A stretch of 64,000 nucleotides of DNA from positions 62,001-126,000 of IMG/VR virus record IMGVR_UViG_3300037502_002993. One strand, written 5' to 3'. Position numbers and translations under genes: made by a program. Below the pieces are notes generated by a model that saw only the letters and a program-made list of their open reading frames with translations, had not been told where the DNA came from and did no database searches. Below, piece after piece: positions 2,334 to 36,876 of the stretch. The stretch's first letter is position 1, and each line of letters opens with the position of its first letter.

Positions 2334-3047
2334 TTAAGACGTTAGGATCATATCCGGGTGATCAGAGGGATCAGAAGGACTGAAGAATTGAATAAATTCC
2401 TCGTCGGGTACGTCAGGTAGGGTGGCAAGCGAAACTACCCGCCAGGTGGGGGAGATCCAGAAGAGGCCTTGGAGTTCCTCTTCGCGAAAGACTTCGGGGT
2501 GATGAATCAATCCCTGTACTCCGCTCTGTGAGGGCGAGCCGGGTACATTCAAGGAGTAAATTTCTCTTGCCTCGGTCCTGAGATCGTTCCGTTGCTGATA
2601 GATACCTTGCCCTGCTGGGTGGGGATAAAGACGCATGCTCATGGCACAGCGTCCCCCAATGGGGATCTCCACGTCCATATGGGCCAGCCGGATGCCGGGT
2701 TCGGGACCCCCCTCTGAGTGATCGTTATGCAACGAGACTGCAGTGAGAGGAGGTAGTCTGCCGAGGTAGAGGTGAGGGAACTCCCGTTTGAGATCGAACA
2801 CCATGGGCTTTAACCAATGGCGGTGGGAGATAGCAGCGCTGCGTACCCCATTCGCCATCCCCAGCACCCACTCCCCGTGCGGGGTGGTGATCTGGGAGGA
2901 GTGGTGAACGACATCCCCCTTACGGTCTATGGAATAGTGGATGACAATCTCTTTATACGTGAATTGGGCATCACCGTCCAGCGATTCAGTGTAGACATCA
3001 AACTTCAGGTGTTTGAGAGTGACGTAGCGATTGTGCATATCTAACAT
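2334..3047 (-). CDS. Hypothetical protein
   Basis: Start moved to ATG 3047, which follows GGAGG. An early-promoter-like motif lies at 3078-3096. Confidence 0.6.
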   Translation of the reverse strand: MLDMHNRYVTLKHLKFDVYTESLDGDAQFTYKEIVIHYSIDRKGDVVHHSSQITTPHGEWVLGMANGVRSAAISHRHWLKPMVFDLKREFPHLYLGRLPPLTAVSLHNDHSEGGPEPGIRLAHMDVEIPIGGRCAMSMRLYPHPAGQGIYQQRNDLRTEAREIYSLNVPGSPSQSGVQGLIHHPEVFREEELQGLFWISPTWRVVSLATLPDVPDEEFIQFFSPSDPSDHPDMILTS

Positions 3048-30335: not shown

Positions 30336-30521
30336 TTATGCCGGAAGCGCACGCAAGGGGCGGTAGAACTTCTCAAAGCGGGCTAGAGGGACGGTCTCCC
30401 GATCTTGGCGTCCTTCTTGCTGAACCACGACCTTATCGCGGCGAACCTCTTTTACGGTCACGACCTGTACGGTGCCGTGCCGCTCGAATTTGAATTGTTG
30501 ATTGAGATACGCTTGGCTCAC
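30336..30521 (-). CDS. Small hypothetical protein
   Basis: 61 aa, AGGAG RBS and GTG start. The RBS lies within the tnpB guide region. Confidence 0.55.
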   Translation of the reverse strand: MSQAYLNQQFKFERHGTVQVVTVKEVRRDKVVVQQEGRQDRETVPLARFEKFYRPLRALPA

Positions 30522-30549
30522 TCGTACGTCTCCTTCACGGTTTCATTGC

Positions 30550-30677
30550 TTGACACTCCCCTTCTTAAAAGAAGGGGATTCTTGCTTCACAGAACTGACT
30601 TACCTTCGGTAAGGAAGGCAGAGGCCACTTTCTCCACAAGCGTTTAGTGAGTCCGTATGCCCTACGGCCTCTGCTAA
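30550..30677 (-). ncRNA. TnpB omegaRNA (cognate copy B); guide from 30549 downward (GCAATGAAACCGTGAAGGAG)
   Basis: Begins just after the tnpB stop. Nested stems, terminal 9-bp hairpin and TCAA right end as in IS200/IS605 elements. Confidence 0.85.
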
Positions 30678-30686
30678 AGCCACTGT

Positions 30687-31904
30687 TCAAGCAGTGAGGT
30701 GGTGTTCTTGGATGAACACCGCTGTGAGTGTTTGTCTTAAATGACTGGTGGGCGGTAGTTGTTCCAGAGCCATGGTCCTTAAGTTGATGGCCGCGTTGTG
30801 ATCGCGATCATGCGTGGTCTTGCAAGAAGGACAATCCCACCAGCGTTGGTGTAGCTTGAGCTTCAGTTTCCCCTCTAAACGATGGTTACACGCACTGCAG
30901 GTCTGAGTACTGGGAAAGAATCGTTCCGCAATGACGACCTTGCAGTGCTGTGACTCATCGGCCTTGTAGACCAACTGAGTCAGGAACTGCCGCCATCCAC
31001 AATCAGCAATGTGTTTAGCGAGTCTCCTGTTCCTGACCATACCCTCAATATTGAGGTCCTCAATAGCAATAGTCATGCATTGGTCTACAAGGCTTCTAGA
31101 AAGCTTGTGCTGAAAGTCCATCCGACACCGCTTGGTTTTTGCGTATATCTTGGCGACTTTCAGCCTCTGCTTTCTGTAGTTGGCACTGCCTTTGACTTTG
31201 CGTGATAGATCGCGCTGTGCCCTCGCCAGTTTCCTGGCATACTGCCCTTGGTATTTGGGTTTGGCATACTCCTTCCCTTCTGAGTCTACCGCAAAGGTCT
31301 TAATCCCTAAGTCCGATCCCAAATGAGACTCCCCATTCGTGAGTCGAGGTTCACATTCACAAATGAAACAAGCATAATACTTACCATCAGACTCACGAAT
31401 GATACTACAGGAAGAAGGTTGGGTGGGGAGTACCCCACCCCATTTCTCGTTCTTGTAACTCCATTTAGTTTTGATGGGGGACTGCATGACTTTCGCCATG
31501 CGGAAATCCCCTGTTTCTAGATTTAAAGTAAAAGCAGCCTTCGTCAGTCGGATGGACTGACGACTGACCCGCTTCTTGTACTTGGGAAATCCAATCTTCC
31601 CTTTCCCTTTGAAAAAGGATTGGAAAGCAGTCCCTAGGTCCCGTAGGGACTGCTGTAGGATGACGGATGAAACCTCATAGAGAAACCCAAACTCATCTTT
31701 TAGTTCGGGAAGACGGTAGGTGAGTGCATTTGCACTCAGTTTGGGTTTCTCTAATGTTGGGTCCGTCTGGTAGGCTTTGTATTCCTCTTGTACCCTACCC
31801 AGTACCTGATTCCAGACAAACCGTTTACAGCCAAACGACCTCACCAGGAGGTCAGTTTGCATGGCATTCGGATAGATCCGAAAACGAAATGTTTTCGTTG
31901 CCAT
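30687..31904 (-). CDS. tnpB: TnpB RNA-guided endonuclease (IS200/IS605 family)
   Basis: FRFRIYPN...FGCKRFVWN N-terminus, RuvC-I GSDLG, RuvC-II IEDL, zinc finger CSAC/CPSC and RuvC-III DRDHNAAINL. All three catalytic residues are present. Confidence 0.95.
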   Translation of the reverse strand: MATKTFRFRIYPNAMQTDLLVRSFGCKRFVWNQVLGRVQEEYKAYQTDPTLEKPKLSANALTYRLPELKDEFGFLYEVSSVILQQSLRDLGTAFQSFFKGKGKIGFPKYKKRVSRQSIRLTKAAFTLNLETGDFRMAKVMQSPIKTKWSYKNEKWGGVLPTQPSSCSIIRESDGKYYACFICECEPRLTNGESHLGSDLGIKTFAVDSEGKEYAKPKYQGQYARKLARAQRDLSRKVKGSANYRKQRLKVAKIYAKTKRCRMDFQHKLSRSLVDQCMTIAIEDLNIEGMVRNRRLAKHIADCGWRQFLTQLVYKADESQHCKVVIAERFFPSTQTCSACNHRLEGKLKLKLHQRWWDCPSCKTTHDRDHNAAINLRTMALEQLPPTSHLRQTLTAVFIQEHHLTA

Positions 31905-31984
31905 GGTTGGCCTCCTGGGGAAATGAGTTAGTGTATATGTTAGTATTTAATGGTCTCTCACCAGGCGGGGTCTGGTGATGCAAA

Positions 31985-32899
31985 TCATCCTCCACCTGAA
32001 GGAGGAGGCTTTATGACCACTGGGTAACCTGACGTTTGGTTGGGATCGGCATCACGCAGCGGGGGTTTCTTTTGTGTAATGATCTTGGGTAATGTTTTAA
32101 CTAACACCTTTTCCATTTTGGTTCTTGGTTTGCCAATGGCTTTCAGCCACTCTTCTGGCGTAAGGTTCCTTTTTATTGAATTACAGGTCTGGCAGGATAG
32201 AGTGGCGTTAACTTCTGAGTTAGATCCACCCCTAGACTTGGGGATCTTGTGCTCCCATTGGAGAATTTTATCCCCACTAACTCCAAGGCAGTATTGGCAC
32301 GTATGGTTGTACCTGTAGAGTAGATACTCACGCATCTCGGTACCGAAGAGCCTGCCCTTCTGATATTCTTTGTCTTTGATACCAGGATTCTTCAGTAAGT
32401 GGGTATCAAACTTTACCTCTTCGACCTTGGCGCTGGTGATGGGACACCAGCGCATGAAGCGATCGATCCAAGTCTGGGTAGTGAGTGCTCGATGTTGGAT
32501 GGAGGGTGGAAGCCACCCTTTAGGTCTAGCGCGGTTCAAGAACCGCGCGGGACGATACCGGGTTTTCCTAGAACGACGAGATCGGCGATACATTGCTCGG
32601 CTAGCCAAACGCTTACGGATCACCTGACCGCGATGCACTAGGTTAATTCCTAACACGCATCGGTCCCCTCGCTTATCGTGAGAGATCACGGCAATCCCGG
32701 TGGTCTTCGAACCAGGATCAATCTGAATGGAAAAGTTATTCCTGATTGGTCCTTTCGGGACATAGTTCAGAATGATAATGAATGGGTACCGTCGGAAGAC
32801 GGCGGCTTTGCCCTTGCGTAACAATTCCCGAGCACGTGCTGGATGACACGGTGCTAAAGGAATTCGATTGGCGTCTAGCACCAATACGTAATTTGACAT
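31985..32899 (-). pseudogene. iscB: IscB (RRXRR/HNH) endonuclease, C-terminally truncated
   Basis: PLAP-C motif, RuvC-I IDPGSK, RRSRRSRKTRYRPARFLNR, RuvC-II E, and HNH EHKIPKSRGGSN...CQTCN. Homology stops at PLRDA (~32048), before RuvC-III and the TAM-interacting domain. Confidence 0.85.
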
Positions 32900-33153
32900 G
32901 ATTTAGGTTTCCCTAATAGTCTACTCGGGTTCAAGACCCTTGTGTTACGTGAACCTCGACAATGTTCAAAAGGCTTGTCATGCACGCCGCACCGCCCCTA
33001 CCTCACAGGACTTTTAACGACGCACCTTAGAGCCAGGGGCTGGTTCGGCCACCCCTGGGTAAGATCACCTAATGAACGGAGTCCCTGTTAGGGGACAGAG
33101 TCTGGTCAGCATTCCCGGAAGGGGACTCCAAGTTGATGGAGGGTGTTACTGAC
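32900..33153 (-). ncRNA. IscB omegaRNA (5' guide from flank 33154-33170)
   Basis: Upstream of iscB. Contains GTCAGTAAC start, TGACCAGACT, CCAGCCCCTGGCTCT and AACATTGTCGAGG blocks typical of IscB omegaRNAs. Confidence 0.75.
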
Positions 33154-33750
33154 AATATCGCTAACCGTGCTCTTGGTGGTGTCATGACAAAGGGCCGTGT
33201 GGTTACCTGCCTTCTGCAATCGTTGCCGGGCAAACAGGTGACGCCTTTGATCGAGGGTTGTGTCATCTAAGACGTCCAACCGATTGATATCTTCCCGATC
33301 ACGAATCCGCTCACGGATGGTGGCGTTGTCCGCGTCCAGGTAGAGCGTCAGATTGGGAGGAACAATAGGTACCCACCCCAGGCCCTTTGGGGTAGTGTTA
33401 GCAATCAGGGTATCAAGTGTCGGGTTGTTGTCACCCTGATAGACATAGGTGGTATCGAGGTGACGGTCACTGATCACCCACCAGCCTTCATCCACTAGCG
33501 GTTTGATGACCTTGGTCAGGTGCTCCCACCGCTGGGCCTGCATGATAAGAATCTCCGTCTCAGGACACAGATCGGTGTAGCGAAACAGTAACGATCGGAT
33601 CTCCTCACCGAATGGGGTCCCTCCGGGTTCTTTGGTGAGGGTGGCCTTATGACCCAAGCTGTTTAGAGCATCTCTTAACGCCCTAGCAATAGTGGACTTA
33701 CCTACGCCATCCTGCCCTTCGATGATAATGAACCCACCTGATGGTGTCAT
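33106..33750 (-). CDS. tmk: Thymidylate (dTMP) kinase
   Basis: IEGQDGVGKST P-loop, TKEPGGT and SDRH..TTYVYQG. The last 15 residues come from the inserted element. Confidence 0.9.
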   Translation of the reverse strand: MTPSGGFIIIEGQDGVGKSTIARALRDALNSLGHKATLTKEPGGTPFGEEIRSLLFRYTDLCPETEILIMQAQRWEHLTKVIKPLVDEGWWVISDRHLDTTYVYQGDNNPTLDTLIANTTPKGLGWVPIVPPNLTLYLDADNATIRERIRDREDINRLDVLDDTTLDQRRHLFARQRLQKAGNHTALCHDTTKSTVSDIVSNTLHQLGVPFREC

Positions 33751-33815
33751 CCTACCTCCTTTGAATTAGCTGGACACAATTCGCAAAGAGCCTGCAAACT
33801 CGTCACCTCGGTGAT

Positions 33816-33943
33816 TTGACACTTCCCTTCTTTTAAGAAGGGAATTCTTGCTTCATTGAACTGACTTACCTTCGGTAAGGAAGGCAGAGGCCACGTTCTC
33901 CACAAGCGTTTTACGAGTCCGTATGCCCTACGGCCTCTGCTAA
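33816..33943 (-). ncRNA. Stand-alone TnpB omegaRNA scaffold copy C; guide from 33815 downward (ATCACCGAGGTGACGAGTTT)
   Basis: Near-identical to copy B with compensatory changes in the terminal hairpin; ends GTGTCAA. Confidence 0.8.
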
Positions 33944-34023
33944 AGTCACTGTATTTAGTGGCCTTATACCAGACTACGTCTGGAGATATCATTCACCCCC
34001 CTCCTTTAGGAGGGGGTTTTACG
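33816..34023 (-). mobile_element. Mini (ORF-less) IS200/IS605 derivative
   Basis: Left-end-like hairpin CGTAAAACCCCCTCCTAAAGGAGGGGGGTG (33994-34023), then the scaffold and TCAA right end. Confidence 0.55.
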
Positions 34024-34061
34024 ATCGCAATCGATAAAGATCCTGCAAGATCACCATCCTG

Positions 34062-34080
34062 GTGATATAAGTCTGAAAAT
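34062..34080 (-). promoter_or_regulatory. Putative phage early promoter upstream of omegaRNA copy C and tmk
   Basis: ATTTTCAGACTTATATCAC fits the repeated motif. Confidence 0.45.
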
Positions 34081-34095
34081 GACTTCAATCCACTG

Positions 34096-34130
34096 TTGAC
34101 ACTCCCCTTCTTAAATGACGGGGTTTTACG
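34096..34130 (-). repeat. Single-hairpin IS end remnant
   Basis: CGTAAAACCCCGTCATTTAAGAAGGGGAGTGTCAA joins the left-end prefix to the right-end suffix. Confidence 0.55.
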
Positions 34131-34206
34131 ACCACAACCGATAAAAAGAATACCACAATAGACAGCCCGCACTTAAGCGGGCTGTCGGAATGACGCTAAC
34201 GCACTA

Positions 34207-36480: not shown

Positions 36481-36876
36481 ATGCGTGAACTTCACGGCCA
36501 CAAAGTCAATCCCGCCAACGATACCGTGACTATTAAAGTCACTGATGAGCCCGGCCAGGGTGGTGCCAACCACCGTTATGAGATCTCTGGTTTTAATACC
36601 GAGACTAATGCGTCTCGGTTGGACCATGATGGTAACCGTCAGCAAGTCAACCTCCTGTTCCAGAATGGTCCCATTCCTGAGTTCGGCGTCAACGGTATCA
36701 CTCACGAGGTACTGTTGGCCATCCTAATTGACCGTTTGCAGGGTTTCCAGAACGGCCCCTATGCCTGTCGTGAAAACGCCCTTGCGTTAACGAAACTACA
36801 AGAAGCGCAAATGTGGCTCCAGTCCCGCACTCGCGAACGAATGACCAGGGGTGTAGAGGGAACTCACGAAAAATAG
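36481..36876 (+). CDS. tad1: Tad1-like anti-Thoeris/anti-CBASS signal sponge
   Basis: GxGGAxHxY...FQxG...LL.I..DRL..FQ.GP...RENA.ALT...EA.MW...R...R..R.V.GT pattern follows Tad1 along its full length. Confidence 0.8.
   Translation: MRELHGHKVNPANDTVTIKVTDEPGQGGANHRYEISGFNTETNASRLDHDGNRQQVNLLFQNGPIPEFGVNGITHEVLLAILIDRLQGFQNGPYACRENALALTKLQEAQMWLQSRTRERMTRGVEGTHEK

What the first reader, a model, noticed from the sequence alone, without database searches (positions are those of the whole stretch)
30550..33170. Chimeric IscB-TnpB element with a guide on each flank of one insertion site
Seen: an IscB omegaRNA and iscB (PLAP, RuvC-I/II, bridge helix and HNH intact) are cut at PLRDA. A left-end-like hairpin, tnpB and its omegaRNA follow on the same strand. 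The missing IscB C-terminus does not appear after the TnpB right end. Known: IscB takes its guide from the 5' flank and TnpB from the 3' flank. Inference: the two guides (..GGTTAGCGATATT and GCAATGAAACC..) would address the two halves of the same reconstructed empty site. The truncated IscB is either dead or an HNH-only variant that still binds its RNA.
Basis: partly seen in the sequence, partly recalled or inferred. Interest (0 to 1): 0.65.

Follow-up and report, generated by a model that had tools for sequence, protein, structure and literature searches.

The report
Broken IscB beside intact TnpB element
Downstream of the thymidylate kinase gene of a 220-kb jumbo phage, a truncated IscB element lies next to a complete TnpB insertion sequence; they are two separate selfish elements, not one chimeric two-guide device, so the locus is fairly ordinary.

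Summary
All features are on the minus strand.

- **IscB side:** tmk reads 15 codons into a full-length HEARO/IscB omegaRNA (33153..32944). iscB (32899..31985) loses homology to 485-497-aa relatives right after PLRDA (residue 284). It therefore lacks RuvC-III and the TAM-interacting domain.
- **TnpB side:** a complete TnpB element follows (32023..30550), with catalytic residues intact and a sharp right end.
- **Missing part:** the IscB C-terminus is nowhere in the 64-kb window.

The interpretation of one chimeric unit, whose two guides address the halves of one empty site, is not supported.

- 24 nt that match neither the paralogous iscB nor the TnpB element separate the iscB break from the TnpB left end. 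They end in TTAC.
- Left ends of six copies in this phage, plus one in another jumbo phage, point to a TTAC/TTAT motif that covaries with the AAAG/AAAA bases before the hairpin, as in IS608. GATATT does not fit this motif.
- The HEARO end of an IscB element is a transposon right end, so the "chimera" would have two right ends.

The phage carries at least 2 IscB elements and 7 copies of the TnpB right-end core. No relatives with an empty site exist in the collections, so the order of events stays inferred. This is a new member of a known kind.

The parts
33106..33750 (-). Thymidylate kinase gene (tmk). Residues 1-199 are native. The last 15 codons and the stop (33153..33106) are read from the 5' end of the IscB omegaRNA.
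   Evidence: Pfam Thymidylate_kin 7e-32. The HEARO match starts at 33153. Alignment with homologues.
33154..33170 (-). Guide portion of the IscB omegaRNA. It is the flank 5' of the scaffold and equals tmk codons about 194-199.
   Evidence: The boundary is fixed by the Rfam model start and by the second IscB copy, whose flank differs. It is unique in the window.
32944..33153 (-). IscB omegaRNA scaffold (HEARO), full length. In TnpA terms it is the right end of the IscB element, on the opposite strand.
   Evidence: RF02033, 120 bits, E 2.6e-25, model 1-211. [quoted passage not shown]
31985..32899 (-). Truncated iscB, 304 codons. Codons 1-284 (32899..32048) are IscB: PLMP, RuvC-I, bridge helix, RuvC-II, HNH. 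Codons 285-304 read through the spacer and the TnpB left end to a stop inside the left-end hairpin.
   Evidence: Pfam. Relatives of 485-497 aa at 57-73% identity. DNA break against the paralogue L010. No extra decay compared with the full-length paralogue.
32024..32047 (-). 24-nt spacer of unknown origin between the iscB break and the TnpB left end. Its last four bases, TTAC (32027..32024), are the predicted TnpB/TnpA target motif (TAM).
   Evidence: No similarity to L010 iscB or its downstream region. No other copy in the window. TTAC position relative to the hairpin.
31905..32023 (-). TnpB element left end: AAAG guide tetranucleotide 32012..32009, imperfect palindrome 32008..31989, a second small hairpin, and the ribosome-binding site of tnpB.
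   Evidence: Alignment with L004, L015, the L014 mini copy and the window mini element. The same architecture occurs in L025.
30687..31904 (-). tnpB, 405 aa, intact, with the RuvC D-E-D positions conserved.
   Evidence: Pfam. 209 bits to ISDra2 TnpB structures 8bf8/8exa/8h1j over residues 3-380; in the alignment printed for the top hit, a designed nuclease (9yyg), DLGI, IAIEDLN and HDRDHNAA are conserved. dN/dS is 0.13-0.17 against the paralogues.
30550..30686 (-). TnpB right end and omegaRNA scaffold: GAAT 30581..30578, imperfect palindrome 30577..30558, terminal AGTGTCAA 30557..30550.
   Evidence: Seven copies on the contig end at the same base and then diverge. Conserved fold with six compensated pairs. 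No Rfam family matched.
30530..30549 (-). Guide portion of the TnpB omegaRNA (GCAATGAAACCGTGAAGGAG). It overlaps the ribosome-binding site of the next phage gene, which starts with GTG at 30521.
   Evidence: It is the flank directly after the right-end boundary. It is unique in the window.
33816..34037 (-). Mini TnpB element (left end joined to right end, 218 nt, no ORF), preceded by TTAT (34037..34034). It lies directly upstream of tmk. Its guide would be 33815..33796.
   Evidence: The right end is 92% identical to copy 1. The left end aligns with L015 and the L014 mini copy.
34096..34144 (-). 45-nt stub in which the 5' arm of a left-end hairpin is joined to the 3' arm and tail of a right end. 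It is preceded by TTAT (34144..34141).

Best explanation
Two separate IS200/IS605-superfamily (OMEGA) elements sit side by side in the stretch between the end of tmk and the next gene of a circular 220.6-kb jumbo phage.

**1. The IscB element.** Its omegaRNA (right-end) side is precisely joined to tmk codon 199. It has since lost its last roughly 200 codons and its far end through a deletion. The left deletion endpoint is at 32048/32047.

**2. The TnpB element.** It is a complete 1474-nt IS608-like non-autonomous element (32023..30550). It lies 3' of a TTAC and keeps an intact left end, tnpB, right end and omegaRNA.

**How it most likely works (inferred from the known family mechanism).**
- Transcription coming from tmk reads through both elements. 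No minus-strand terminator-like site was found between tmk and tnpB.
- TnpB binds the RNA made from its right end. The flank GCAATGAAACC... serves as guide.
- The complex cuts element-free alleles carrying TTAC plus that sequence, for example in co-infecting relatives or after excision. Recombination then copies the element back (homing and retention).

**Status of the IscB part.** The IscB remnant still makes an omegaRNA whose guide matches the tmk end. The protein lacks RuvC-III and the TAM-interacting domain, so it is most likely a recent pseudogene.

**What remains open.** Whether the 24-nt spacer is phage DNA (for example the old tmk tail, with which it is in frame) or the far tip of the IscB element is unresolved.
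For: - Element boundaries come from paralogous copies.
- iscB homology ends at residue 284, at both protein and DNA level.
- The 24-nt spacer matches neither the paralogous iscB nor the TnpB element.
- The TTAC/TTAT motif 15-17 nt before the left-end hairpin covaries with the AAAG/AAAA tetranucleotide in 5 of 6 copies on this contig and in L025 from another phage. This matches the IS608 rule in PMC3201880.
- The right end is GAAT, hairpin, AGTG, TCAA.
- TnpB is intact and under purifying selection.
- The same genome holds 7 copies of the TnpB right-end core and 2 IscB elements, so independent insertions are expected.
- The HEARO side of an IscB element is its right end.
- The junction is present in two assemblies.
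- No minus-strand terminator-like site lies between tmk and tnpB.
Against: - No relative with an empty or intermediate site was found, so the order of events and the deletion are inferred, not observed.
- One paralogue (L004) has TTCA where TTAC is expected.
- The remaining 284 iscB codons and the omegaRNA show no decay relative to the full-length copy. This is also what a still-useful truncated protein would show.
- TAM preference and RNA expression were not measured.
Confidence: 0.72

Rival explanations
1. A single chimeric IscB-TnpB element occupies one insertion site. The IscB guide (left flank) and the TnpB guide (right flank) address the two halves of the same empty site...GATATT|GCAATGAAACC....
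For: - Both flanks are correctly identified.
- Joining them closes the tmk reading frame after four codons (AMKP, stop), immediately before the AAGGAG of the next gene (read directly from the sequence).
- Both RNAs look intact.
Against: - There are 24 nt of non-element DNA ending in TTAC between the iscB break and the TnpB left end.
- The deduced TAM, TTAC/TTAT, does not fit GATATT.
- Both outer ends would be right ends, so TnpA could not move the unit.
- The truncated IscB has no TAM-interacting domain.
- The tmk tail would be shorter than in all ten homologues aligned.
Confidence: 0.08
2. Nested insertion. The TnpB element landed inside the IscB element itself, at a TTAC in its far tip. A later internal deletion removed iscB codons 285 to the end. 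The 24-nt spacer is then the last piece of the IscB element, and the phage sequence resumes at, or a few bases before, GCAATGAAACC.
For: - In related jumbo-phage IscB elements the next gene starts only 22-27 nt after the iscB stop, and these far ends are too diverse to align. A 24-nt IscB tip would therefore not be recognisable.
- The paralogous iscB has a TTAC 34 nt after the break position.
Against: - The spacer has no similarity to the paralogue's 3' region.
- It requires the TnpB insertion to coincide with the very end of another element.
- The spacer has no stop codon in any frame (read from the sequence), so it cannot include the end of the iscB ORF.
Confidence: 0.14
3. The truncated IscB is retained for a function. 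It would be an RNA-binding or HNH-only protein that still uses its omegaRNA.
For: - The ORF is open for 284 codons. It is as close to the outgroups as the full-length paralogue is, with only 2 unique conservative changes at otherwise invariant sites against 3 in the paralogue.
- The omegaRNA scores 120 bits over its full length.
- The HNH domain is intact.
Against: - The RuvC fold cannot be completed without RuvC-III.
- TAM recognition, which known IscB needs before DNA unwinding, resides in the missing C-terminal domain (established from OgeuIscB structures, recalled from memory).
- Lack of decay is equally explained by a recent deletion.
- No other truncated copy of this kind stood out among the listed relatives; the few shorter ones (323-369 aa) were not examined, and one is labelled partial.
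Confidence: 0.05
4. Assembly artefact. The iscB-TnpB junction is a mis-join at repeated sequence.
For: The TnpB ends are repeated seven times on the contig, and the Logan contigs break at them.
Against: A Logan contig matches 32976..31869 exactly, spanning the break, the spacer, the left end and the start of tnpB. The JGI contig agrees.
Confidence: 0.01

Closest known systems
IS608 of Helicobacter pylori (IS200/IS605 family), and tnpA-less IS1341-type derivatives carrying tnpB only
   Same: - Insertion 3' of a TTAC-type tetranucleotide.
- A 4-nt guide (AAAG) just 5' of the left-end imperfect palindrome.
- A right end finishing in TCAA a few bases after its palindrome.
- No terminal inverted repeats and no target duplication at copy 1.
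   Different: - Spacing is 15-17 nt rather than 19 at the left end, and 8 rather than 10 at the right end.
- No tnpA lies next to it.
- It resides in a jumbo phage.
- A second left-end subtype uses TTAT with AAAA.
ISDra2 TnpB with its omegaRNA (structures 8exa, 8h1j)
   Same: - About 209 bits over nearly the full length; the D-E-D motifs are conserved in the printed alignment to the top hit.
- The RNA scaffold is encoded at the right end, with the guide taken from the 3' flank.
   Different: - A different TAM is predicted (TTAC/TTAT against TTGAT).
- The omegaRNA scaffold lies almost wholly downstream of the stop codon.
- No Rfam family matches it.
IscB with HEARO omegaRNA (for example OgeuIscB, 7xht)
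   Same: - HEARO RNA upstream with a 5' guide.
- PLMP, RuvC-I, bridge helix, RuvC-II and HNH are present.
- It is inserted in the same orientation as the upstream gene, as noted for IscB elements by Meers et al.
   Different: RuvC-III and the TAM-interacting domain are deleted (304 aa against 485-497 aa).
ISGst families and their PATEs in Geobacillus stearothermophilus (Meers et al. 2023)
   Same: - One genome carries several IscB and TnpB elements.
- It also carries protein-less mini elements made of the two ends.
   Different: - The host here is a phage genome.
- No tnpA has been identified so far (not tested over the whole contig).
- The IscB and TnpB ends here are not obviously alike.

Membership tests
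IS200/IS605-family TnpB element (IS608-like) | TnpB protein with HTH, OrfB_IS605 (RuvC) and zinc-ribbon domains and catalytic D-E-D | tested here: met
   Pfam, three domains. 209 bits to ISDra2 TnpB; the catalytic motifs are conserved in the printed alignment to the top hit, 9yyg.
IS200/IS605-family TnpB element (IS608-like) | Subterminal imperfect palindromes at both ends, and sharp boundaries shared by copies with unrelated flanks | tested here: met
   Left-end hairpin 32008..31989 and right-end hairpin 30577..30558. Seven right ends stop at the same base. Left ends align from just after the TTAC/TTAT motif (subtype 2; copy 1 and L004 align from a few bases inside).
IS200/IS605-family TnpB element (IS608-like) | Insertion 3' of a short target motif that pairs with the 4 nt before the left-end hairpin | tested here: met
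   TTAT goes with AAAA in 4 copies. TTAC goes with AAAG in copy 1 and in L025. L004 is the exception, with TTCA. The rule is taken from PMC3201880.
IS200/IS605-family TnpB element (IS608-like) | omegaRNA from the right end with a conserved fold and a 3' guide | tested here: inconclusive
   The consensus fold has 39 pairs, 6 of them with compensatory changes, among 7 near-identical copies. No Rfam family matched. There are no RNA data.
IS200/IS605-family TnpB element (IS608-like) | Y1 (HUH) TnpA transposase available in cis or in trans | not tested
   None lies adjacent to any copy examined. The whole contig and the host could not be scanned.
IscB / HEARO OMEGA element | HEARO omegaRNA directly upstream of iscB | tested here: met
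   RF02033, 120 bits, full length.
IscB / HEARO OMEGA element | Complete split RuvC (I, II, III), HNH and a C-terminal TAM-interacting domain | tested here: not met
   Homology ends at residue 284. The KDHWIDA motif and about 200 further residues present in all seven full-length relatives aligned are absent, and they are absent from the whole window.
   A 24-nt spacer lies between them. The HEARO side is a right end according to Meers et al., so both outer ends are right ends.
   The deduced TAM is TTAC/TTAT. This is an inference from element boundaries, not an assay.
   No relatives were found: megablast against phages gave nothing, IMG/VR returned only the source contig, two metagenome scans were empty, and the best tmk homologue is 44% identical.
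PATE-like mini element (window 34033..33816) | Both transposon ends present, with no protein-coding gene | tested here: met
   A left end of about 81 nt is joined to a 137-nt right end.

The most novel reading that the evidence does not exclude
The truncated IscB (PLMP, RuvC-I/II, bridge helix, HNH) and its intact omegaRNA are kept under selection. Together with the neighbouring TnpB they would form a two-guide cassette that polices the same tmk-downstream locus from both sides. That would be a natural pairing of a Cas9-ancestor remnant and a Cas12 ancestor in one phage operon.
Probability: 0.05. Interest if true: 0.7.

Novelty: new member of a known kind. Interest (0 to 1): 0.3.

Why it matters
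The locus itself is an ordinary pile-up of insertion sequences.

The context has some value. A circular 220-kb jumbo phage carries two IscB elements and seven copies of the core of one TnpB right end. The tnpB genes are under purifying selection (dN/dS about 0.15). The omegaRNA ends are almost identical even though synonymous divergence between the genes is 0.6-0.9. The left ends give a clean natural example of the IS608 rule, with target motif and guide tetranucleotide covarying (TTAC with AAAG, TTAT with AAAA).

This makes the phage a convenient natural system for asking two questions:
- how RNA-guided homing elements persist in virulent phage genomes where no transposase has been identified next to any copy;
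- what TAM this TnpB clade uses.

It does not reveal a new kind of system.

Tried and rejected
**Search for an empty or intermediate site in relatives.** None of these gave an empty site.
- Megablast of 12 kb against 50,697 phage records: no match.
- tmk against IMG/VR: only the source contig.
- tmk protein patterns and a 23-nt right-flank pattern against metagenome contigs: nothing.
- tmk against 5.8 billion proteins: next best hit 44% identical.
- Exact look-ups of the two neighbouring proteins: only the same phage, in JGI and Logan assemblies that break at the repeats.

**Search for the missing IscB part or its far end.**
- tblastn and blastn of the paralogue's 3' part against the window: nothing.
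- Alignment of the regions after iscB in three related jumbo-phage contigs and the paralogue: not alignable. The IscB far end and its TAM could not be defined.

**Idea that TnpB inserted into the iscB ORF proper.** Rejected, because the 19-24 nt before TTAC are not iscB.

**Idea that the spacer is copied from elsewhere in the window.** Rejected.

**Other targets for either guide in the window.** None.

**Rfam family for the TnpB RNA.** None.

**Bacterial genomes.** They hold only relatives at 40% identity or less by the pattern scan.

**TnpA.** Not looked for systematically.

**Structure and complex prediction.** Not run, because neither would separate the models.
Full report
**Source.** The window is part of IMGVR_UViG_3300037502_002993, a 220,598-bp contig. 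Its two ends overlap by 120 nt, so the assembly is circular or terminally redundant. PHROG matches identify a large tailed phage: terminase, phiKZ-type virion proteins and tail fibre proteins. The tmk gene is most similar to those of jumbo phages such as Goslar and Erwinia and Vibrio jumbo phages, at about 30-34% identity. No near relative exists in the phage record collection.

**Observation.** All features are on the minus strand.
- tmk (33750..33106) is a thymidylate kinase.
- Rfam finds a full-length HEARO RNA, the IscB omegaRNA, at 33153..32944 with 120 bits against a gathering score of 83.
- The tmk frame continues 15 codons into this RNA. The guide portion (33170..33154) is therefore the last native tmk codons.
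- A second IscB element spans the contig ends. It starts with the same GTCAGTAAC after an unrelated flank, which fixes the boundary at 33153/33154.
- iscB (32899..31985, 304 aa) has the RRXRR and HNH domains.
- Its closest relatives are 485-497 aa long and 57-84% identical. The alignment stops after PLRDA, residue 284.
- At the DNA level, similarity to the paralogue stops at 32048/32047.
- The lost part includes the RuvC-III motif KDHWIDA and the whole C-terminal domain.
- A tblastn of the paralogue's residues 285-485 finds nothing in the 64-kb window.

**TnpB element.**
- tnpB (31904..30687, 405 aa) has all three Pfam domains.
- It matches ISDra2 TnpB structures over residues 3-380, and the catalytic motifs are conserved in the printed alignment to the top PDB hit.
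- The core of its right end occurs seven times in IMG/VR, all on this one contig and all on the same strand.
- The seven comprise three full tnpB genes (this one, L004, L015), one 5'-truncated gene (L005), two mini elements and one solo right end.
- All copies end at ...AGTGTCAA and then diverge. The element therefore ends at 30550, and the guide begins GCAATGAAACC.
- The right end has a conserved fold with a few compensated pairs. Rfam has no family for it.
- The left ends fall into two subtypes.
- In four copies, TTAT is followed 17 nt later by AAAA and a CCCC-type hairpin.
- In copy 1, TTAC (32027..32024) is followed 15 nt later by AAAG (32012..32009) and the hairpin 32008..31989.
- An unrelated jumbo-phage copy (L025, TnpB 53% identical) has TTAC, 17 nt, AAAG and a hairpin.
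- This is the IS608 arrangement, in which the cleavage and target tetranucleotide TTAC is read by the AAAG just 5' of the left palindrome, and the right end finishes in TCAA (PMC3201880).
- L004 is an exception, with TTCA.

**Why this is not one chimeric element.**
1. Between the iscB break (32048) and the first base of the TnpB left end (32023) lie 24 nt. They match neither the paralogous iscB nor the TnpB element, and they end in the TTAC motif. The TnpB element is thus a complete unit with its own target motif. Its empty site is ...GGTTAC followed by GCAATGAAACC.
2. This does not fit TTAC/TTAT.
3. [quoted passage not shown] The outer ends of the proposed chimera would both be right ends, on opposite strands. 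The IscB TAM side is exactly what has been deleted.
4. With a direct junction, tmk would end seven residues after the conserved V196. The ten homologues aligned carry 10-22 residues there. With the 24 nt included, the frame also stays open and gives 15 residues, but this is weak evidence.

**Most likely history and mechanism.** In a genome that is heavily colonised by both element types, an IscB element and a TnpB element came to lie next to each other downstream of tmk. A deletion then removed the 3' third of iscB and its far end. The order of events cannot be shown, because no relative with an empty or intermediate site exists in any collection searched. The junction itself is real: an independent Logan contig reproduces 32976..31869 exactly. 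By the established model for these elements, TnpB with its right-end RNA would cut TTAC-flanked, element-free alleles and be copied back by recombination. In a phage this amounts to homing during co-infection. This step is inferred. The tnpB paralogues show dN/dS of 0.13-0.17 at dS 0.6-0.9, while their right ends are nearly identical. This argues that both protein and RNA are functional. No minus-strand terminator-like site lies between tmk and tnpB, so read-through from tmk is plausible.

**The truncated IscB.** It cannot complete a RuvC fold and has no TAM-interacting domain, so it is most likely inactive. However, its 284 codons are as close to outgroup IscBs as the full-length paralogue is. 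It has two unique conservative changes at otherwise invariant sites, against three in the paralogue, and the omegaRNA is intact. The deletion is therefore recent, or, less likely, the remnant is still useful.

**Comparison and novelty.** The TnpB element is a member of the IS200/IS605 family with IS608-like ends. The IscB part is a member of the IscB/HEARO family that fails the completeness test. The mini elements correspond to PATEs. TnpB and IscB genes in large phages have been reported before; papers mentioning both turned up but were not read in detail. I rate this a new member of a known kind, of modest interest.

Noticed in passing
window 33816..34037 (-): A 218-nt mini TnpB element (left end joined to right end, no ORF) sits directly upstream of tmk and is preceded by TTAT. 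tmk is therefore flanked on both sides by ends of the same element family. The JGI annotation calls an 81-aa gene across it.
   Followed up: partly
window 34096..34144 (-): A 45-nt stub in which the first half of a left-end hairpin is fused to the second half and tail of a right end. It is preceded by TTAT. It looks like the product of recombination between the two similar hairpins.
   Followed up: partly
window 33785..33815 and 34036..34066 (-): The 31 nt after the mini element's right end resemble 31 nt lying just 5' of its TTAT. The local score is 25 against 12.3 +/- 2.2 in shuffles, reached by 2 of 2000. The upstream copy is itself preceded by TTAT. IS200/IS605 elements make no target duplications, so this is unexplained.
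   Followed up: partly
L004, L005, L011, L014, L015 (same contig, at about 190, 34, 14, 45 and 50 kb): All seven copies of the TnpB right-end core lie on one strand of the contig. Right ends are near-identical (copy 1 and L015 are identical) while the tnpB ORFs differ by dS 0.6-0.9. This suggests strong constraint on the RNA or gene conversion of it.
   Followed up: partly
L020 9390..9591 plus L010 1..1633: A full-length IscB element (485 aa, 84% identical over the shared 284 residues) spans the contig ends. It is inserted 43 nt after an ORF of the same orientation.
   Followed up: partly
L004 about 2900..2925: This tnpB copy has TTCA where the left-end rule predicts TTAC, and it has an internal 24-nt gap in its left end. 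It may no longer be mobilisable.
   Followed up: no
L025 2850..4360: In another jumbo-phage contig, a TnpB element (53% identical protein, with TTAC, 17 nt, AAAG and a hairpin at its left end) ends 30 nt upstream of a thymidylate kinase gene. This echoes the mini element upstream of tmk here. The two tmk proteins are only 36% identical.
   Followed up: no
window 36481..36876 (+): A 131-aa protein with an Acb2/Tad1 hairpin domain (Pfam PF24729, E 4.6e-07). It is a candidate sponge for cyclic-nucleotide defence signals.
   Followed up: no
L021, L022, L023: The closest IscB relatives (63-70% identical) lie in phage-like contigs, one of them next to a TubZ-like gene. In each, the next gene starts only 22-27 nt after the iscB stop. 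This IscB clade seems to be phage-borne, with very short far ends.
   Followed up: no
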